Of a stretch of DNA of 64,000 bases, positions 860 through 61,610 are shown piece by piece. The position numbers were made by a program, and so were the translations under genes. The stretch spans positions 13,268,001 through 13,332,000 of the forward strand of contig OZ004610.1 of NCBI GenBank assembly GCA_963924565.1. Direction: 5' to 3'. The notes below the pieces were generated by a model. The model did no database searches and was not told the DNA's origin. It saw nothing but the letters and a program-made list of their open reading frames with translations. This DNA comes from Ascidiella aspersa (Eukaryota). Each line of letters opens with the position of its first letter. Positions within the stretch are counted from its first letter, which is position 1.

Positions 860-3800
860 GCTGGTGGGACAGCTTTGCATCTTGCAGCGAAAAGAGGTGA
901 TGTGGCCACTATTGAACTGTTATTGTTCTATGGAGCTGATCGAACGAAAAGGTAAGTAATGCCTAAGCATTGTAGCTTTCAAAGGAATGTGAAAGTTACT
1001 TGTTTGAACCTGTCGTGTTTGTTTTATAATGTGGCATTATGTAATTTATGAATATAAAATGTACTTCAAAGAATATTGAAGCTCTTCCCACATTTATTAA
1101 TTTACAATAAAATTTGTGTTAAGGGCAGAGTAGACTGTCATTTAAAACAAACTTGAATCAAAATTAACACTGCCTTTTGGTTATTATAACAGGGACAGCT
1201 TGGGATATCCACCTGAATTTTATGCAAATAAAAATGGACTTTCTATTGAAAAATTATATCAAAGTTTACAAATGGTCCTGGGTGAAAATACTAAAATGGT
1301 ATGTAATATCTCCATTATTCAATACTAAAAGTAAAGTGTATTTTTTATGGTTATTATTTTCTTTAAATAGTTTATGCAACTATAATACCAATATGTCCTT
1401 CAATCAAAATGTATTTTTTTTATGAAACCTTTGAATGTTTTGTTTAGTATAACTGTGTTTTGTTTTAGCATAACCTTGCTCTGCTGACTGGTGCAGCCAC
1501 AGAGAACATGAGACATGCTCAAGGAACATCACCATTCACAGAAATGGGAAGGCTACTGTACCAAACCTATCAGCCGCCCATTCTTGCTCAGGATTTGATT
1601 CAAAAGCAATTCAGTCACATGCTTGCACCTCAAGCAAGAAACCCAATGTTTGACTCAAATCACTCCTCAGGGTCCTATAACATACACTCAAATTCGTCAG
1701 TTAGTAGGATGAGGCCCGATGTTATGTTGGGTTACAACCCATTACCATCGCACTCACCTGGGTTTTCGCAAGCATCCTATGATAGATTCCCCATTCCCTT
1801 TGAGAATATGATGAGGCCATCATCACACAAACCTAGTTTGAACCCAACTGGCGTTAAACACCAAGTAGGCGATACTTTTGACATCTCAAAACAGAGAAAG
1901 AGTCCTTACAACAGTGCATCATCTCAATTCCAGCAACAGGCGAAGTCATTGTCAGGTGGCGATTCTTCGGTTTTTAAAACTTACATAAGAAATGAGTCAC
2001 ATCAAGGCCGAATAGACTTGCAAAAGTCCTCCAGGGAGAAAAGTTCTGACAGAAGGTACCAAGCGAGTGATTCAAAATCCTCATTTCACATTGACAGTCT
2101 TGCAAAATCACATGCAATCTCATCAATGGTCAACAAACCTATTGAAACAACAAATGAAGTAACACATCAACGAAGTTATGCTGCTACCAGTTATACGGAT
2201 TCCTTGTTATCAAGTGGGATTGATGCAGCTCAAATCCGATCACCTTTTTCAACTGATTTTTATCGCCACTCCGAAATACCTGGGCTTAATACCCCTGTGT
2301 CAGCATCTAATGTTAAAATGGCCCCAGGTTATCCTTACCACCACAGCTATCCAAATGGTGATGGCCAATTTCAAAATATTCCCCTTCCTTATATCGCACC
2401 TTACCCTTATTCTACCCACGATCCTAAATCAAAAAGGCCACAAGAACAAACAGTGTTATCCAGTAGAGGACATGAGTCCAGGCAGTTTAATCATCAACCT
2501 CCTTCACTGAAATCTAGCTTTGCTCCACTTGAACCAGTCCATAAAAAGTCCATGTTGGGTGCCTCAAACAGTCCTCCTGTAAGTGCAACAGGATTCTATA
2601 ACCCCAGCAAGAATGGACTTGAGACTATTGAGCTAAAAAGTTCGAAGAAACTAAATCGTTCTAGTAATGAACTTCACCCTACAACGATGACACATGAATT
2701 TGACGGGAGACTAGACAGGCCTGTTCAACGTAGCTTGTCAAAGATACATGAGCCAACAAAAGTGCCACAAGAGCATATTGTACTCACAAGAGGGTTAGTA
2801 GACAACGGAAGTAATCTCCATCCAGTAAGCAGAGAAATTCAAAATCCTCAAAATTTTGAAAATTACCCTGTTTCCTATTCACTGCAAAAACCTCCACTGC
2901 ATACTGTTGATAAAATTGTATCACCAGTACACAAGCCTGAAAAAGATGCCCCCTGTACATCCACTGCTCAGCCTCAGGCAAGTTACCATCCTGTGAAACC
3001 GCTCCCACCAGTGATTGTTATACCAGACGTAAATGAAAATTCAACTGTGGAAAATGATTCTAAACATGTAGTCGATACCCAAAAAGATGTACATAAGTCA
3101 AGCGGTGACACAATTTCTAAAGCTGATACTGACACTCTTACAAACACTGAAGGTATTGAACAGGACAATAAAAACTTGGATCCTCCAACAAATCAAGTAC
3201 CATCTCAAACTCCCATGGAATCAACATCTAAAGAAAAGATAGCCCAAAAAAGAAAGCTAGCACATGGTAAACTTGACATTGTGTATTTTTAGTTTTACCT
3301 TATTTTTTGCCTGAACTTAACTGATTGTTAAGTTTATAGTAGTGGTTTTCAAACGTTTTTTAACCTAGTACTAATACAGGCGATTTACCAGACAAGCTAT
3401 CAAATTATTTTTAATATTATTGTTATTAAAAATTAGTGAATAGAATGTGCACTAGCTAATATTATTTATCAGTCAATGAAATTATTGGATTATCGTGAGT
3501 CCACTGACCGCAGTTTTGAGAACCACTGGTTTAGAGATTAGATTTTACTTACACTTTAAAATATTTACTTTTAGATCCATCGGAGGACATTGCACAGAAA
3601 AAGAACAGATCAGAGAGTACGGATGTTGACTCCTTGTCTACAGATACTAACAGAAAACAATCCTCAGATGATGCAGCAAAAAGAGAAAAGCGACAGCGAA
3701 AATCTGAAACAGGTACATTGCCTGAAGTTCTTGGTGCCTAAGTATCTAATTCAGCTGTGGGCAAATGGGCTGTTTACTGGTATACTGGTATGTGCAAAAT

Positions 3801-6800
3801 TTTGCCTTGTTATATTCCCTCACCTCCTAATGTTGCTGTTTACCGTCTTTCTGAAAAGTAATAGACCGCTTGAAGTTTAAAATAGCCTCGGTTAACTTTT
3901 CATGATGGCATAAAACAAAACTGCAAACTAGGGATTGCACACAAAATTTCTGGCTTATACTGGTATTTTTCCTAAATTGCTTATAGTTGCATATCTTGAA
4001 AAGGACTTCAGCCTTCCGAAATTAGGACAACATTAACTTCAAAACAAAGGTAGTTGGGAATGGTGCGGAACCGGACAAATACCTAATAGAAGTCCATTGG
4101 AATCAGACCGAAAAGGCCAGAATAAAGCCTATACAACCTTTTATCTAACCCCACTCATTACCCGACATATTCCGACATGTTGGGTTGTTAATCTGTTATG
4201 ATTATTACTGCAAGTTTTGCTTTATTATGTTGTTGGTCTTAATGCTATTGTTGCTTTGTAGGTGTTATTGTGTGTTCACCTTGAAAGTACTGTAGAATCA
4301 ATGAGCTAACCTTATTTAAAAAAATATATATAGGTTTTTATGTTAAAGCTTTTTTTTCTGTTGCTCGCGGCGCACCGGTTAAGAAACGCTGCACTATTGG
4401 TTTGTTGCGCGATATTTTCCTGTCTGAAATATAGAGTATTGGTATCCGACATCCCTAGACCAAACCGAGTCCAATAAAAATGACAACATTTCGATAATTT
4501 TCAATAGATATTAATGTGTGTCTGGATAATGATGATGTATCTAGGGTTTTACTTTGGTATATACGTTGAAAACCATTGTTGTATTCTTTTGACACGGTAA
4601 TGGCCTGGTAGATTAGTTCGTTTTAAATTCGAAGAAACAGATTTAATAAAACTTTTGAATATTTAAAAGAGTTTAAAGTTACCTTAGTTATTATTGTAAA
4701 ATGCTAAAATGCCTGGTTAGGTGTCTGTTTTGGTAATAGTGCTGAATTACAGTATGTTTAATCCCTGGCATGGTCTTGCGGCACACCTTTTGCAGAGCAC
4801 TAGGCTTAGGTCCAAGTTTTTGAGAAAAACAGCAGTAATCTTACCAATCTTAGGTTTGTCTGTTGAAAAAGTCCAACATGTGCATATATTTACATTCAAG
4901 AACTATTTTGTTTAGCTTATTGTAACATACTTTTTGTTGTGCAGAGGATGAATTTTATTATGCCTGGGGTGATGCATATGATGACTTTTCCAGCACAGAA
5001 CCAGAAAATGATGATTCTAGTGATGAAGATTTTTGCTGTCCAATAACTAAGCAACCTATCATAAAATCAAAGTCTTTGGGAAAAAGAAGACCAAAACGCT
5101 CATCTTCTTTTAGAGCATCTGATTCTTTGAATGGAAGTTCCGACCATTCAATTGGGGACAATTTTAGTGAATCAGAACAAAGTTCAACCAAAAATCGTAA
5201 AAGATCCAAGGCGGAAACCTTGGAACACATGAAGAATAAAAAAAGGCAACAGCTTGCCAAAAGTATATTGCAGCATAAACAAAACAAAAAGAAGTTGAAA
5301 AAGAACCGCAAATTATCAAGTGACTCTGTATCCAGCAACTCTATAAAAAACAATCGCCTATCCCGGGCTGTTTTAGAGAAAGTGGATATATCTCAAAAAG
5401 ATAGACTGCGCAAGAAATCCAAGTTGGAGAAGCGCAAACAGCGTGGAAAGGCTAGAAATGAGAGAGATAAAAACACTGGTAAGTTTAATACCAGCGAGGA
5501 AAAAACATCTCCTGAAGGTAGAAAGAAGAGCAAATACTCCAAACGAGAATTTCAAAAGATTAAATTAGAGAAAAGGTCAAAAAAGAAAACTTTGCAGAAG
5601 CTAAGAGCAAACCAACCACCATTGAAGATTAGTACCTCAATTGAAAAAAAGGATGAGTCCCCCTGTCCTAAGATCTCAAAAACATTAATGGAGTTGTACA
5701 CAGGATCTAAACCTGAACCGGCCAATGTGGATCTCCACTCACCTGTCACAAACACAAGCGAGTCATCAAATTTATTTGGTGATGAACTTACTGAAAAGGA
5801 AGCCCAGGTTTTAAGCAAAATCCTGGAGAATGATAAACAGCCTTTAGTAGGCTCTTCTGCTGTTAGTTCAAATACTGTTTCCAGGCAAACAAACAACGAG
5901 GATAAACCAACAGAAGTGAATTTAGTGGAAAAACCTAAATCCGAAGAGAAACCTAAAAAGAAGCGAGGACGAAAGCCAAAGAACATTGTACGCGAAGAAA
6001 ATTTAAACTTAGTTTCAACTAAAGACACAAAACAAGTAGAAGCACTTTCTGAAATGAATGATAAGGATGAACTTTCTAAACAAGTTAAAAAGTTCAAACT
6101 GTCCAAAAAGTCTAATAAATACACTAAACAACCACATACACCATTAAGGTAAATTATCTTTACTTAAACATTGAAGTTCAATGTCTTAGTGTAATACATG
6201 TGATGTTTTGCAGAAACAAACTCGCAAATGCAATGAAGGACTTAAATGATGATAAATCTAACATTGATGATCACAAAATAAAAACAGAGGTGATTCCTAA
6301 TTAGTCTTGGTCAACTGGTTTAATTACTAATGTAAAATAAAAAAATATTTTTTTCTTTATAAACCATATTAGTGTGATTGGGATATATTATGTTAGTGCT
6401 ATTTTTTGCTGATCTACTGACTGTTAACATGGTTTCCATGAGAGGTGTCATCGTTTTATTCTACTTCATATGTTTATGTTTCAACATCTATATATGAAAT
6501 AAAGTTATCTGATTATTATATTCCAGAATTGTACAACTATTTACCTTTTACCGTTTATCTGAACAGATAACACCAATTGCACACCAGCACAATCAAGTGG
6601 CTTTGCCTTCCCTTCTTTCACGCTTAACCGACGCAGGTTCCATAAAAGTATGTATAATTTTTAAAACATGAAAAGTAAAAGTGTTTCCTTTATTTTGAGC
6701 ACTTTGAATTAAGACTTTTTTGTTTTGTTGAACCAGGCTGAAGAGGAACAGCTTCCAATTAAACCACAAACTTTTGATTCAAGATCTAATTCTCCCTTTT

Positions 6801-57282: not shown

Positions 57283-58631
57283 AAGCTTTCGTATTGCAAT
57301 TTTTTTCGTTTAATTTGTATTAGTCATTATAAAGCCAGGGCCACGCGAGAAATGATATTGCGGTACAACCTCCCTTACTTTTAACTTTGCCTAATGGTAC
57401 GATTGTATGAAAGGGCACAAATGGACGTCAAGGTGTACCGAGCAATGAACATAGTTTTATATATACACAATGTGAACATACTTGATATTTTGTTGGTTTG
57501 GCACTTATATTTGCATGGATTAAGTTACGCCAAAATATTCGTCGCTGCTATATGGAATTGGCGCCAAAGAGTTTTTGTAATATAACGACAAGTCCAATCG
57601 TTAATTATTTATTCTTCTGCTATTCTGCAACTTCATTATCTTACGAATGTACAACTAAGGAGTTTTAAATATTTATAGTTTAATTGCATTTAAGGTGAAA
57701 TAGGCCAAAGTTTATATAATGCGACAATAAAAAAATATTCAAAAATTATGACGTGTTAGCAACTTGCAAAGTGTTCGCCCAACATACCTAATAGAATAGA
57801 ATGGTTTGCTACCCCAGCATGAAACTTTCCAAGAACAACGCCGCATAACTGCCCCATTAGATAGCCTATAACAAAACGTAATGTGAATTTATAAATCATG
57901 ATTGTAACTAACCAAAGAGCTGACGTATGACTGATCAGACGTTTTTATATTTCGCGCGGAATATAAAAATAATGCAAAGTACAAAAAGCACCCAGCTAGA
58001 TTCATTTTGCTTTTTTTGGTAGGCACATCGAAATAAACAAATGTTTTTTTTGTCACGTGTCTGGATTTTAATAAGGTTGACTTTATGGTTGATATATCGT
58101 AGAATCGCAACCAACTCCACTTACTTGGCGGGGAACCACCGGTCACACAGGACGGTATTGAATTCAAAGGTCCCGTTAGCCAAATTAAAACTGCAAAAAC
58201 GGAAACATGGCCCAACTAGTTGAAATCTTGGGCTGGTTGGGGTAAACACGATGCAATGACCTTGCTGCAAGGAAGTTAGATTTTTGCGAAAAAAGTAGCG
58301 CTCAATAAACTCCATTGACTAGTACTAGAACTATAAGTTTACATTTTTTTTGGAAAAAGTCTTATCACGGCGCTTTTTGGAAAAAGTCTTATCACGGCTC
58401 TAGACTATGCGGTAAAATAAAACAGCTGTAACCTAATAGTAGTAATTTCGATAAGTGGGATAAATTTGGTCGTTGATTGACTTTACGTCAGCAAACGTCA
58501 TATTTCGAGTAGGGCCGTTACACTCTCGTGAGTTTGACATTTAGAAGACATAAAACAGTCGCGCGAATGCATTTATATTGATCAATTATGTCCGTAGGAA
58601 TATAAAATGATCCGCGAAACCGCCTTTAAAT

Positions 58632-58866
58632 CACGGAGTCGAACCGGAACCGAAAAACTTTATGAACCGGTTTTGGGTCAATTTTTTCCTAACCGTAAAC
58701 GAACCTGAACCGTTTTCGGTAAGATTCCAAGGAGCCGAACCGGAACTGAACCGAATAATTTGAAAGAACATGAACCTTAACCAAAGAGACTTCAACAATT
58801 TAAATCTCCTTGCCTTACCTTAACCGAACCCGAACCCATGCCTATAACAAAAGCGGTTCACTCCCT
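58632..58866. mobile_element. GAACCG-repeat MITE family, copy 1
   Basis: Termini CACGGAGTCGAACCG / CGGTTCACTCCCT with internal (GAACCG/GAACCT)n. Alignable along its length with 63826-64000. Confidence 0.75.
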
Positions 58867-59085
58867 TATGACGTCACAACTTGAATTTTATAGAATCAAG
58901 TTATGCAATCGTCTTGCACTGTTGTTAAAAACTATGAAGCAGTTTTGTGGTGAGAATGGGATCCAAGTTGTTTTCCACCAGCAGATCTTATAGCCGAATC
59001 TTAAATCTTTAACCACCAGACCACACGCTTTTTCCAAACATACTTTGGTTACGCATCAAAATCGTTTATGTTGTTCATATAATTT

Positions 59086-60401
59086 TTTTTTTTTTGCAGC
59101 ATCCTTAGATGCTAAGGGGGGTAGATTTATTTGGGGACGCGAGAAATGTAAACAAGTACGTGATGGGAAAATAACAAAAAAGGGGGAAACAAATGTGGAG
59201 AGAATATTGTGTACGTGAGCATGGCACTGTGGTTTTAGGAATAAATTCTTGTTTTGGGTTACTTGAGTTGCTTTTTTGGCATCGAGGTTAAATGTGTTGC
59301 AGATTAGAACCCGCAATGGCAAACGGTGTTGCGGTCAAATAGTTGTCCGCAATCCATACATCTTTCAAATGAGGTGTAGCATTTTGAACAGTGGTATGTT
59401 TTGTCACCTTCTCGGTGTCTGGTGGGTCGGCTGCAATATGTACATTTCAATTGAGGGTCCTGTGTGGGGGGAGTCGGTGGGGTTGACGATTTGGTTGATT
59501 GAGGTGCTCGTGAGTTGGTCTTCTTTGGGTTGCTTGCTTGTGGGGGGAGTTGTTTTGTTCTTCCTTTTCTCGGACTTTGATTTGTTGGTTTTGGGGGCAG
59601 CGTCGTGTTGTTCAACTATTTCTTCCGGCCCAAAGTGTATCAGGTCCGTTGGGTTGTTGCTATTGGTTGGTTCGGAAGTTGCTTTTGATTGGTTGATTGG
59701 TTGTTGATGGTGGTGGATTGCTTTATGTGTTGCTGGTGATTTCCTTATGGTGAGATGATGTAGTGGCTTCGAATTGGCTTTTGGGGGGGTGGGAGTTTCG
59801 CTGGAGTGGTGGGGATTAGTAGGAGGGCTATGCAGTCTTCTTTAATATGACCGAAGTCTTTACAGAGGTAGCATTGCGGTGGTTGGCCCAGGTACCTAAC
59901 CGGGAAAGTGAGGCCCTGGCACCCTACTGTAGCTGGGATCTTTCGTTTTCATGTTCAAATCTTTCGTTTTTATTTCCAGGGTGATTCTACCATCGGGGAG
60001 TCCTGCGAAACGGTCTTTATTTCTTTTTGTTTCTTTGATGTTTGGGTTGAACTACGTTGATGATCTCTCCTATGTTGAAGCGGGGAGGTACATGGGCGAG
60101 CTCTACGCTGGTGAATTCTGCTTCGTAGCGTCGAGCGAACTCGACTTCAGGAATTCTGCCTTATTTGCATACGAGTTCTTGTGCCTGAGGTCCAGTGTGG
60201 CACGTAAAGTCCACAAATCCAGATTTTCGATCGATGATACCTTCGAGATTGCATACTTCGAATGAGATGACTTCTAGGATCTTGTAGATATATTCTCTTG
60301 ACTTCTTCTCCGGGAATCTCGCTAATACTTCCGTTTCTCTCGAGAAGATCTCCTTTCGTCCTGACATGTTTCTTGCTTTGTCGAGTTAAAAATTCGAACT
60401 G
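59086..60401 (-). mobile_element. ORF1-only non-LTR retroelement (half-L1-like), complete, with degraded ORF
   Basis: 14-bp TSD TGTTCATATAATTT (59072-59085, 60402-60415) and a T run at 59083-59095 (poly(A) on the minus strand). ATG at 60367, a CCHC knuckle RYLGQPPQCYLCKDFGHIKEDC (Cys codons 59873-59832), and a Cys-rich C-terminus with stop at 59304. One premature stop (60161-60163) and several frameshifts. No endonuclease or RT. Confidence 0.82.
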
Positions 60402-60719
60402 TGTTCATATAATTTAGGAAACCACTTACAAGAGCCATGGGATTGCCTTCATCCGATAGAAAAATTAATCAGTCCATGATTTGTGCAATCCTTTTAATGT
60501 GAAATCTCAAATTTATAAGATGTCTATGTACTGTAGTGATTGGCAGCATTTCATACGATGGAAATACCACAACTCCATAAGTATGTTGTAAAAAATATTC
60601 AAATAATTAAACCAAAAAAATAATATTTAAAAATTTGTTGATGAATAGCTTTTGGCCTAAGTTTCGTGTTAACATCAAGATGGTTATAAATGTATTATTT
60701 TCCAACTAGAAAAAGTTAC

Positions 60720-60798: not shown

Positions 60799-61242
60799 GT
60801 AAGTGATGAAACTGTTTTTCAGGCAATACTTCCAAAATTGTGACTATCGCGGTTAGAAGTACCCAGTTCTATAATGTTTAATGGTATATATATGATTAAT
60901 ATATATTTCTCCATTTGGACGTCGAACTGCGACTTTTATACACAGGTCAAACTCCGCTGGTTCACACTGGACGCATTAAGTCCAGTTCACACATAACGAG
61001 TTGCCAGCGTTAACAGCAAATTTCCTCGCTTCTAACCGAAGGCGTCAAAGTTGAATTATTTCAACTTTCCTCAACCGAAAGCGTTTTTTAAAAAACGATT
61101 TACGTCAACAACCTTAATAATTGTACAACGATACCATGTCCATATTGACAGTTAATGTCACTTATACGTCGCAACATCATAGTGCAATGTAAAGATATAC
61201 TTGTATAATATTTAAAGCATCTATTGTAATATATGCCTTTTT

Positions 61243-61610
61243 GGCGCTGGTCTAGAATCCTACTTTTTATAATTACGAAAGAAGAAACGCGTTGTTAAAA
61301 TTGAATTGCAATGAAGAAATAAATATTGGATAATAAAGGTAATAATAATACTTGATTTACTCCACCCACTAACTCGCACCCTTACCCAAATAATGTTAGA
61401 AATGTAACCACCTGGTCTAGAATTTTACCACCGTGTCGAAACAATTATTATTAAAGCAATGCACAATAGTTGGGTTAGGCTGTTGGTTTGTGTGATAGTG
61501 GATAAAGTATTATTATATTTATCATTTAATAATATTGCTTAACCTACCTAAACGCTAACCCACATCCTAATCCAAATTATGTTTGTTGTGGTAGGATTCT
61601 AGACCAGTGC
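61243..61610. mobile_element. Unclassified MITE family, copy 2
   Basis: TIR GGCGCTGGTCTAGAATCCTAC / GTAGGATTCTAGACCAGTGC, with internal GGGTTAGG/CTAACCC and AAGTATTATTA motifs shared with 12905-13206. Confidence 0.7.

What the first reader, a model, noticed from the sequence alone, without database searches (positions are those of the whole stretch)
59072..60415. Complete ORF1-only ('half-L1'-like) retroposon with a second Cys-rich module
Seen: a 1316-bp unit between two copies of a 14-bp TSD. On the minus strand it starts CAGTT, has a 34-nt leader, one ORF1-like coding region, a ~210-nt 3' UTR and poly(A). The coding region has an N-terminal domain, a YxGQPxxCxxCxxxGHxxxxC knuckle, a P/T/K-rich linker and CTYC..HCSKC..CMDC..CHC. 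Known: poly(A) plus a long TSD marks LINE-type target-primed reverse transcription; the YxGQP-CCHC knuckle is typical of L1/Tx1-clade ORF1 and ZCCHC3-like proteins; truncated LINEs normally lose ORF1 and keep the ORF2 3' end, and ORF1-only HAL1 elements are described mainly from vertebrates. Inference: this is a non-autonomous family that supplies its own RNA-binding protein and borrows RT in trans, with an unusual extra C-terminal zinc-binding module. The alternative is a processed pseudogene of a domesticated ORF1 gene.
Basis: partly seen in the sequence, partly recalled or inferred. Interest (0 to 1): 0.8.

Follow-up and report, generated by a model that had tools for sequence, protein, structure and literature searches.

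The report
Histone-headed ORF1-only retroposon, dead copy
This is a dead, silent copy of a small jumping gene that keeps only the RNA-binding half of a LINE and begins with the first 46 letters of a histone H4 messenger RNA, which suggests its parent was switched on by a histone gene's own promoter.

Summary
The unit is real. It is 1316 bp on the minus strand (59086-60401), with a perfect 14-bp target-site duplication and a short poly(A). It holds an ORF1-like region and no ORF2. It is not intact: the coding path has one stop and four frame changes, and RNA reads give about zero depth.

It belongs to a small family of 13 independent loci on five contigs. Other members have their own TSDs (20 and about 19 bp). 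One is 5'-truncated, and one keeps a 360-aa ORF. Subfamilies are mosaics, and dN/dS is about 0.17.

Element bases 1-46 are the 5'UTR plus codons 1-4 (MSGR) of this genome's histone H4 genes, starting at the predicted H4 start site. Sister copies carry the H2B leader plus MAAS instead. Related L1-type LINEs and a sister ORF1-only element sit inside histone gene 5' ends in the histone cluster.

The "extra" C-terminal Cys module is shared with the autonomous LINE ORF1s and with ascidian homologues, so it is not special to this family.

Best reading: an off-target retrocopy of a HAL1-like family transcribed from histone promoters. No H4-resident master is in the assembly, which holds 6 H4 genes against at least 60-fold read depth.

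The parts
60402..60415 (-). Upstream copy of the 14-bp target-site duplication (AAATTATATGAACA on the minus strand).
   Evidence: The match is exact, and 0 of 300 shuffles reached its score.
60356..60401 (-). Histone H4 head, element nt 1-46: the 34-nt H4 5'UTR starting at the CAGTT initiator, plus ATG TCA GGA CG(C), which encodes MSGR.
   Evidence: Searches show it is identical or near-identical to the leader of the 6 H4 genes at C8:18246926-18299170. In one search, DNA depth here is about 460x against about 7x nearby. About 1000 loose read ends on each side read into H4 codons 5 onward and into the H4 TATA promoter.
59895..60367 (-). N-terminal ORF1 region, broken in this copy. It starts at the ATG at 60365-60367. 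It carries a TAA at codon 69 (60161-60163), an 8-nt deletion and a 4-nt insertion relative to its relatives.
   Evidence: In the intact relative L002 this region is predicted to be two RRM-like domains, with pLDDT above 92 and Foldseek matches to tandem-RRM proteins.
59832..59894 (-). CCHC zinc knuckle YLGQPPQCYLCKDFGHIKEDC.
   Evidence: Y, Q, C, C, H and C are at least 90% conserved in 62 homologues. The Pfam zf-CCHC match is only weak: E=0.051, below the curated cut-off.
59445..59831 (-). P/T/K-rich linker. It is read in a different frame from the knuckle and the Cys module in this copy. In L002 the equivalent region is predicted to be disordered.
59304..59444 (-). C-terminal 8-Cys module (C-x2-C ... 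C-x2-C ... C-x2-C ... C-x-C), including the stop codon at 59304-59306.
   Evidence: The module is shared with the LINE456, LINE427 and LINE498 ORF1s and with homologues P0001, P0004, P0007 and P0012-14. In the L002 model its pLDDT is 84-91. Zinc binding was not tested.
59096..59303 (-). 3'UTR. It contains AATAAA (59126-59131), a C-run and a terminal 7-bp hairpin AGCATCT-AA-GGATGCT (59098-59113).
   Evidence: The hairpin is kept in 7 of 7 folded 3' ends. By eye it is also kept in L009, with an A-U to G-C change on both sides in the L004/L009 type.
59086..59095 (-). Poly(A) tail: 10 A, or 13 A counting the AAA shared with the TSD.
59072..59085 (-). Downstream copy of the 14-bp target-site duplication.

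Best explanation
The window element is an old, inactivated and untranscribed off-target retrocopy. It was made by LINE target-primed reverse transcription.

Its family is a small HAL1-like, ORF1-only, non-autonomous family. The family derives from an L1/Tx1-type LINE lineage that lives in the 5' ends of this (probably ascidian) genome's histone genes.

The family RNA encodes a protein with two RRM-like domains, a CCHC knuckle, a disordered linker and a Cys-rich C-terminal module. The RNA ends in its own AAUAAA, a C-run, a hairpin and poly(A).

The family has no promoter or start codon of its own. Its 5' end is the histone H4 mRNA leader plus codons 1-4, or in sister subfamilies the H2B leader plus codons 1-4, fused in frame.

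What is shown:
- the hallmarks of retroposition;
- the family structure;
- the histone origin of the head, which starts at the histone initiator;
- constraint on the ORF;
- decay and silence of this copy.

What is inferred:
- master copies sit, or sat, inside H4 and H2B genes, are read from the histone promoters and translated from the histone ATG;
- reverse transcriptase is supplied in trans by the poly(A)-tailed 427/498-type LINEs that use the same H4 junction.
For: Retroposition:
- The TSD is 14 bp, with poly(A).
- Relatives have their own TSDs: L004 20 bp and L011 about 19 bp. L011 is 5'-truncated at nt 1020.

Family:
- The own-genome DNA search gave 28 matches. Eight of these are head-only. 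The rest merge into 13 independent loci on C1, C3, C4, C8 and C9.
- No close copy has an ORF2. The nearest ORF2-bearing relative, LINE456, has an ORF1 only 46-50% identical.
- In the tree the family is sister to the 392-aa ORF1-only genes (support 98/92), and the two together are sister to the LINE456 ORF1 (93/90).

Head:
- nt 1-46 equal the H4 leader plus MSGR.
- The leader occurs 12 times in the assembly: 6 genuine H4 genes, 4 family copies and 2 heads of 427-type LINEs.
- The junction GGACGC|AA.GAGATC occurs in exactly 4 places.
- 427-type LINEs L026 and L027 join the H4 head at the same point, within 1 nt.
- L005, L006 and L010 carry the H2B leader plus MAAS instead.
- L026 carries an H2B head followed by an H4 head.

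Resident insertions in sister lineages:
- The 392-aa element lies between 256 bp of H2A/H2B promoter (98% identical) and the rest of the H2B 5'UTR.
- LINE427 lies in the H1 5'UTR.

Constraint:
- dN/dS is 0.17 for L002 vs L009 (dS 1.26) and 0.18 for L002 vs L006.

L1 affinity of the relatives:
- Their ORF2 has Exo_endo_phos, RVT_1 and zf-RVT domains.
- The best PDB match is human L1 ORF2p at 7.5e-59, against 6.6e-19 for R2.

Death and silence of this copy:
- One stop and four frame changes.
- RNA depth is 0-0.67 over the element body.
Against: - No copy of this family is preceded by an H4 promoter. All 4 H4-headed copies are dispersed.
- L007 and L008 touch only 9-10 nt of H2B codons 9-12.
- No autonomous LINE shares the family's 3' end. 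The tail patterns hit only family members, in 2 and 5 places, so the partner is only inferred.
- Copy number is low, and 4 of 8 copies examined show no detectable TSD.
- Expression from histone promoters was not observed for this family. The one RNA run showed only H4 reads on the head.
- A low-copy, selected ORF also fits a host gene.
Confidence: 0.7

Rival explanations
1. A domesticated host gene with processed pseudogenes. An ORF1-derived cellular gene, driven by a captured histone promoter, is under host selection. The window unit and its relatives are ordinary processed pseudogenes of its mRNA.
For: - Copy number is low.
- Purifying selection is strong, with dN/dS about 0.17.
- L002 keeps an intact 360-aa ORF.
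- The sister 392-aa genes stand as an intact tandem triplet behind a 98%-identical H2B promoter.
- No matching autonomous 3' end was found.
- Phallusia homologues are annotated as a zinc-finger gene.
Against: - No promoter-bearing intact locus of this family exists in the assembly.
- No intron-bearing parent exists. The apparent 'first exon' hits are H4 genes and LINE heads.
- The family is a set of recombinant subfamilies with two different heads and two different Cys/3'UTR modules, each represented by retrocopies.
- The cluster copies lie in a nest of LINE fragments.
Confidence: 0.15
2. A template-switch chimera. The histone head was added during reverse transcription, when the LINE RT jumped from the 5' end of the element RNA onto an abundant histone mRNA and ran to its cap, as in U6-L1 chimeric retrogenes (recalled). 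No element was ever resident in H4.
For: - Heads start at the histone start site and end at internal mRNA positions.
- No H4-resident copy is present in the assembly.
- The mosaic bodies show frequent template exchange or recombination.
Against: - The same junction is shared by 4 copies whose bodies differ by up to 28% in the N-domain.
- Two autonomous-type LINEs share that junction within 1 nt.
- The fusion is in frame and supplies the only start codon.
- Sister lineages are seen physically inserted in histone genes, with promoter upstream and the rest of the gene downstream.
- All element heads share a base that differs from today's 6 H4 genes, which points to inheritance rather than repeated capture.
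Confidence: 0.12
3. A one-off product: a single LINE copy that lost ORF2 by deletion or premature polyadenylation.
For: The ORF1 is homologous to autonomous LINE ORF1s.
Against: - 13 independent loci share the same 3' end, and none has an ORF2.
- The nearest ORF2-bearing ORF1 is only 46-50% identical, with dS saturated.
Confidence: 0.02

Closest known systems
HAL1 ('half-L1') elements of mammals
   Same: Both are non-autonomous L1 derivatives that encode only ORF1p. HAL1 arose repeatedly (PMC5753468, passages read). Both have a poly(A) tail and TSDs, and mobilisation in trans is presumed for both.
   Different: - The ORF1 here has RRM-like domains, a CCHC knuckle and a Cys module, not the coiled-coil/RRM/CTD type of mammalian L1 (the mammalian type is recalled).
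- The host is probably an ascidian.
- The 5' end is a histone mRNA leader and start codon, not an L1 5'UTR.
- Copy number is tiny.
- No partner with a shared 3' end was found.
Target-specific LINEs co-transcribed with their host gene (R1/R2 in rDNA; Tx1-clade elements in snRNA, 5S or repeat targets; recalled)
   Same: Relatives of this family sit at fixed sites in a tandem multigene family, in sense orientation, and lack a promoter of their own.
   Different: - The target is a Pol II protein-coding gene family, the histones.
- The host leader and start codon are retained on the element RNA and used in frame.
- Searches found no paper describing this. These were listings only, and subscription journals are not covered.
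L1 5' transduction and chimeric retrogenes (recalled)
   Same: Host sequence at the 5' end of a retrocopy marks the upstream promoter used, or a template switch.
   Different: Here the head is heritable, shared across subfamilies and with autonomous-type LINEs, and supplies the start codon.
ZF(CCHC)-19 of Phallusia mammillata (P0001, P0005)
   Same: These are the best named homologues (profile E=3.3e-68 and 3.0e-54). The architecture is the same, including the C-terminal Cys module.
   Different: They are annotated as a zinc-finger gene from transcripts. Their genomic context is unknown, and no histone-derived N-terminus was examined.
ZCCHC3 (Pfam RBD_ZCCHC3_1st/2nd plus zf-CCHC)
   Same: The layout is similar: two RNA-binding domains followed by a CCHC knuckle. 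ESM Atlas feature hits scored 0.89 and 0.87, which is lead level only.
   Different: L002 has no Pfam match. Only 2 of 62 homologues match RBD_ZCCHC3_2nd, weakly, at best 3e-4.

Membership tests
LINE-mediated (TPRT) retrocopy | 3' poly(A) directly followed by a target-site duplication that also precedes the 5' end. | tested here: met
   The TSD is 14 of 14 bp, with a 10-13 A tail.
LINE-mediated (TPRT) retrocopy | Other copies at unrelated sites with different TSDs, and 5'-truncated copies. | tested here: met
   L004 has a 20-bp TSD. L011 has a TSD of about 19 bp and starts at nt 1020. Three of 8 copies have clear TSDs, 1 is marginal and 4 have none.
HAL1-like ORF1-only non-autonomous LINE derivative | Encodes an ORF1 homologue and no ORF2, EN or RT. 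| tested here: met
   Full-length copies run from the head to poly(A) in about 1.3 kb. In tblastn, ORF2 matches only neighbouring nested LINE fragments.
HAL1-like ORF1-only non-autonomous LINE derivative | The ORF1 derives from an L1-superfamily LINE. | tested here: met
   The ORF1 groups with the LINE456 ORF1. The related ORF2s have Exo_endo_phos, RVT_1 and zf-RVT domains, and their best PDB match is L1 ORF2p. L1 versus Tx1 clade was not resolved.
HAL1-like ORF1-only non-autonomous LINE derivative | Mobilised in trans by an autonomous partner, for example through a shared 3' end. | tested here: not met
   The 3' tail patterns hit only family copies. The LINE456, LINE427 and LINE498 tails differ. 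Poly(A)-dependent trans-mobilisation remains possible but cannot be tested here.
LINE ORF1p of the RRM plus CCHC type ('type I'; name recalled) | RRM fold followed by a CCHC knuckle. | tested here: met
   The AF2 model of L002 has pLDDT above 92 for residues 10-185. Foldseek matches tandem-RRM proteins at E about 3e-7 with probability 1.00. The CCHC residues are conserved. This was tested on the intact relative, not on the broken window copy.
ZCCHC3-like proteins | A match to Pfam RBD_ZCCHC3_1st or RBD_ZCCHC3_2nd. | tested here: not met
   L002 matches 0 families at E<=0.01. Two of 62 homologues match weakly.
Processed pseudogene of an intron-bearing host gene | A parental locus with a promoter and introns that the retrocopy lacks. 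| tested here: not met
   The separate hits to nt 1-52 are H4 genes or heads of other LINEs, not a first exon. No promoter-bearing family locus was found.
Histone-resident (target-specific) LINE guild of this genome | A copy flanked by the histone promoter and leader upstream and the rest of the same histone gene downstream. | tested here: inconclusive
   This is met for the sister 392-aa element in the H2B 5'UTR and for LINE427 in the H1 5'UTR. For this family there are only heads on dispersed copies and 9-10 nt of H2B at L007 and L008. The assembly holds 6 H4 genes against at least 60-fold read depth.

The most novel reading that the evidence does not exclude
An ORF1-only retroposon lineage has survived for a long time, with dS saturated against its nearest LINE. 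It may do so by living as an in-frame fusion to histone H4 or H2B start codons. It would borrow promoter, leader and AUG from replication-dependent histone genes, so that it is probably expressed in S phase. It exchanges heads, RNA-binding domains and Cys/3' modules with sister lineages. A conserved 3' hairpin may serve as the handle for a partner RT.
Probability: 0.45. Interest if true: 0.75.

Novelty: new variant of a known kind. Interest (0 to 1): 0.6.

Why it matters
ORF1-only LINE derivatives are described mainly from mammals (HAL1). Target-specific LINEs are known from RNA genes and simple repeats. This case is a non-autonomous, protein-coding retroposon outside vertebrates whose promoter, leader and start codon all come from histone genes. 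If masters really sit in the histone arrays, the system offers three things:
- a natural case of a mobile element tied to S-phase transcription;
- a test of what ORF1p alone contributes to mobilisation;
- a marker of turnover in concerted-evolving histone arrays.

The window copy itself is an ordinary dead retrocopy. Its value is as a fossil of that lifestyle.

Tried and rejected
Intron idea. One search showed nt 1-52 hitting separately in C8, a few kb upstream of L007 and L008, and I suspected a spliced host gene. Searches showed that those hits are genuine H4 genes or heads of other, 427-type, LINEs. I dropped the idea.

L002 as a promoter-bearing master. Its upstream sequence contains CAATAG and GTGACGTAA, and H4 identity extends about 6 nt further. 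However, alignment to the H4 promoter scored no better than shuffles: 35.7 against a mean of 35.7, with a fraction of 0.476 reaching the observed score. Control flanks scored 29-40. I rejected this. The 6-nt extension remains unexplained.

H4 homology past nt 46. BLAST extended the window copy to H4 codon 8. The A/G-rich hexamer there is also present in H2B-headed copies, so I count it as element body.

Empty site. No listed joint skips 59086-60401 in X6, X1 or X3. However, 111 joints were not shown and X6 depth was only about 7x. X1 bridges only the 3' junction (record 3). Its record 7 starts 16 nt inside the element, which is too short to count as bridging.

Searches that returned nothing:
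- The search for homologous proteins with the L002 ORF.
- Pfam on the ORF1s, apart from a weak zf-CCHC match.
- A PDB sequence search with the ORF1 profile, which gave only two insignificant hits.
- Papers on histone-targeting LINEs (listings only). Supplements were closed and not consulted.

I did not fold the C-terminal module on its own, did not resolve L1 versus Tx1 by an RT tree, and did not identify the species.
Full report
**1. Observation**

On the minus strand, 59086-60401 is a 1316-bp unit flanked by two exact copies of AAATTATATGAACA. None of 300 shuffles of the downstream flank reached the same match score.

The unit starts CAGTT and has ATG at nt 35-37. It contains:
- a CCHC knuckle (59832-59894);
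- a P/T/K-rich linker;
- an 8-Cys module (59304-59444);
- a 3'UTR of about 205 nt with AATAAA;
- 10-13 A.

The coding region is not intact. Against the intact relative L002, the homologous path changes frame four times and has a TAA at codon 69. The longest ORF from the ATG is 68 aa.

**2. A family, not a one-off**

A DNA search of the window's own genome (308.6 Mb, 75 contigs) gave 28 matches. Eight cover only nt 1-52. The rest merge into 16 places, or 13 independent loci when four segmental copies of one insertion (L011, L012, L013, L015) count once. The loci lie on C1, C3, C4, C8 and C9.

L002 and L003 align over 1-1316, at 77% and 78%. L004 aligns over 1-935 plus 1228-1316.

TSDs and tails:
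- L004 has its own 20-bp TSD.
- L011 starts at nt 1020 and has poly(A) plus a TSD of about 19 bp.
- L006 is marginal.
- L002, L003, L005 and L010 show none.
- Seven of these eight copies show an A-run at the 3' end; L006 ends in a broken one.

ORFs:
- L002 keeps a 360-aa ORF.
- L009 has 348 aa. Its start codon is recruited from the 3'UTR of an upstream fragment.
- L006 has 388 aa, with its C-terminus lost.

No close copy continues into an ORF2. In the tblastn map, ORF2 pieces next to L008 begin at ORF2 residue 294 and belong to a nested 427-type LINE.

**3. The head is histone H4**

The nt 1-52 hits in C8 are six genuine H4 genes. After the shared leader they read [37 protein letters not shown] lies 31 nt upstream of CAGTT, preceded by CCAAT and TGACGTCA.

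BLAST of one 4.7-kb histone unit (H1-H4-H3-H2A/H2B) against the family loci gave these results:
- WIN, L002, L003 and L004 carry H4 positions 18246925-18246971, that is the 5'UTR plus ATG TCA GGA CGC.
- L005, L006 and L010 carry H2B positions 18249159-18249215, that is the 5'UTR plus ATG GCT GCA AGC.

Genome-wide, the H4 leader occurs 12 times at up to 3 mismatches: 6 H4 genes, these 4 copies, and 2 heads of degenerate 427-type LINEs, L026 and L027. The head-body junction occurs in exactly 4 places.

All element heads differ from today's six H4 genes at one shared base (GCAAG or GTAAG against GCTAG). In L026 and L027 the H4 part ends within 1 nt of the family's junction. L026 carries an H2B head directly followed by the H4 head.

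Raw DNA reads agree. Depth over 60340-60456 is about 460x against about 7x nearby. About 1000 reads on each side run off into H4 codons 5 onward and into the H4 TATA region.

**4. Context in the histone cluster**

C8:18.245-18.301 Mb holds histone units interrupted by full L1-type LINEs.
- LINE427 has an ORF1 of 427 aa and an ORF2 of 1142 aa. It sits in the H1 5'UTR about 14 nt before the ATG.
- LINE498 has an ORF1 of 498 aa and an ORF2 of 1141 aa. It sits in the H4 promoter.

Next to the array, LINE456 (ORF1 456 aa, ORF2 1140 aa) and a 392-aa ORF1-only gene flank one H2A/H2B bidirectional promoter. The promoter segment is 256 bp and 98% identical. Each element is in sense to the histone gene it replaces. 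The rest of the H2B 5'UTR plus 13 codons follows the 392-aa element and is fused to a further 516-aa ORF1-like frame. This block is tandemly triplicated.

I found the histone head, before consulting the scan's earlier notes. Those notes describe the same guild of histone-resident LINEs in this genome. I treat them as agreeing leads, not as evidence.

**5. What the protein is**

The ORF2s of the autonomous relatives have Exo_endo_phos, RVT_1 and zf-RVT domains. They match human L1 ORF2p best, at 7.5e-59 against 6.6e-19 for R2.

A profile of five ORF1s found 380 proteins at E<=1e-3, and 12 at E<=1e-30, among 1.84 billion. Of the ten I looked up, two carry a name, both 'ZF(CCHC)-19' of the ascidian Phallusia mammillata. 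Eight are unnamed.

An AlphaFold model of L002 built on 62 sequences has mean pLDDT 77.8. pLDDT is above 92 for residues 10-185, 84-91 for the Cys module, and low for the linker. Foldseek matches the N-terminal half to tandem-RRM proteins such as NONO, Sxl, HuR and hnRNP A1, at E about 3e-7.

Pfam gives only a sub-threshold zf-CCHC match, and no ZCCHC3 domains.

The C-terminal Cys module occurs in the LINE456, LINE427 and LINE498 ORF1s and in the ascidian and metagenomic homologues. It is therefore a feature of this ORF1 clade, not an addition in the ORF1-only family.

In the tree the family is sister to the 392-aa ORF1-only genes (98/92). Both are sister to the LINE456 ORF1 (93/90), and then to the Phallusia proteins (97/94).

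**6. Evolution of the family**

Segment-wise identities show mosaics.
- N-domain: {WIN, L007} 92%; {L002, L004} 94%; a beta group {L003, L005, L006, L008, L009, L010} at 89-98%. Alpha against beta is about 72%.
- Linker: L002 groups with L005, L006 and L008 at 94-96%.
- Cys module and 3'UTR: WIN groups with L003, L010 and L011. L004 groups with L009 at 93%, and these two are only about 50% identical to the rest.
- L003 joins an H4 head to a beta body.

dN/dS (Nei-Gojobori) is 0.17 for L002 vs L009 (dS 1.26), 0.18 for L002 vs L006, 0.43 for L006 vs L009 and 0.29 for L002 vs L004.

The 3' end keeps AATAAA, a C-run and a 7-bp hairpin just before poly(A) in all 7 ends folded. In the divergent L004/L009 type, one pair changes on both sides (A-U to G-C) and one becomes a wobble pair.

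This tail occurs only in family copies. The LINE456/392 tail (GCGAATAAAC.AACATA, no poly(A)) and the 427/498 tail differ from it.

**7. State of the window copy**

Its five lesions are not shared with L007, its closest N-domain relative. This fits decay after insertion.

In the RNA run X7, with about 6% of the run read, mean depth over the body is 0-0.67 per bin. Only the H4 head bin (2.9 and 0.7) and the flanking repeats are covered.

DNA run X6 covers the element at the same depth as its flanks, about 4-10x. No listed joint removes it. X1 bridges the 3' junction. X3, which carries another organism label, holds body pieces with 0-1 differences. So there is no sign of an empty allele, but power is limited.

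**8. Reading**

I think the most likely account is this. An ORF1-only lineage derived from histone-resident L1-type LINEs is transcribed from histone promoters and translated from the histone ATG. The window copy is a dispersed, off-target, now dead retrocopy of an H4-headed RNA.

The weakest links are:
- the absence of an H4-resident master in a collapsed assembly;
- the unidentified RT partner;
- the lack of expression data for the family.

The host-gene and template-switch readings remain open at roughly 0.15 and 0.12.

**9. Known or new**

I found no paper on LINEs or ORF1-only elements that use histone genes this way (listings only). Subscription journals and supplements were not seen. 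Other windows of this scan had already noted the guild.

I rate this window as a new variant of a known kind.

Noticed in passing
window 58585-58935 and 60925-61500: High-copy repeats flank the element. DNA depth is about 250-830x against about 7x, with many internal joints and some RNA reads. Their family was not identified.
   Followed up: no
G000 C8:18246926-18299170 (L059-L064): Only 6 H4 genes with this leader are assembled, and the region has a 200-N gap. Read depth on the H4 leader is at least 60 times single-copy depth, so the histone array is strongly collapsed in the assembly.
   Followed up: partly
L026 (C8:18721943-18722026, minus strand): A 427-type LINE copy carries two stacked heads. 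Thirty-nine nt of H2B 5'UTR (100% identical) are directly followed by the H4 leader plus 5 codons. This looks like heads accreted over successive stays in different histone genes.
   Followed up: partly
L065/L066 (C8:18307650-18316800): A tandem triplet. Each unit has the H2A/H2B promoter, a 392-aa ORF1-only gene, the rest of the H2B leader plus 13 codons, and a 516-aa ORF1-like frame beginning MAASKGTKKAV.
   Followed up: partly
L009 (C1:21667890-21669215): A 5'-truncated family copy lies inside the 3'UTR of another fragment. Its 348-aa ORF takes its ATG from that 3'UTR.
   Followed up: partly
L002 (C1:18340275-18340281): Identity to the H4 gene extends about 6 nt upstream of CAGTT (GATTT-A) in this copy only. 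This could be an alternative start site or chance. The rest of the upstream flank is not promoter-like.
   Followed up: yes
G000 C3:26631-27137 and C5:21119-21625: Two ORF1 matches with identical scores to the LINE498-type copy in the histone cluster lie within 30 kb of contig starts.
   Followed up: no
window 1508-3292 and 5076-6152: Long open frames of 594 aa (Ser/Pro-rich) and 358 aa (Lys/Ser-rich) on the plus strand. They are probably exons of host genes. I did not examine them.
   Followed up: no
P0001 and P0005 (Phallusia mammillata ZF(CCHC)-19): These proteins are annotated as a zinc-finger gene. They share the whole ORF1 architecture and group inside the LINE ORF1 clade, so they may be LINE ORF1 products or derivatives.
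   Followed up: partly
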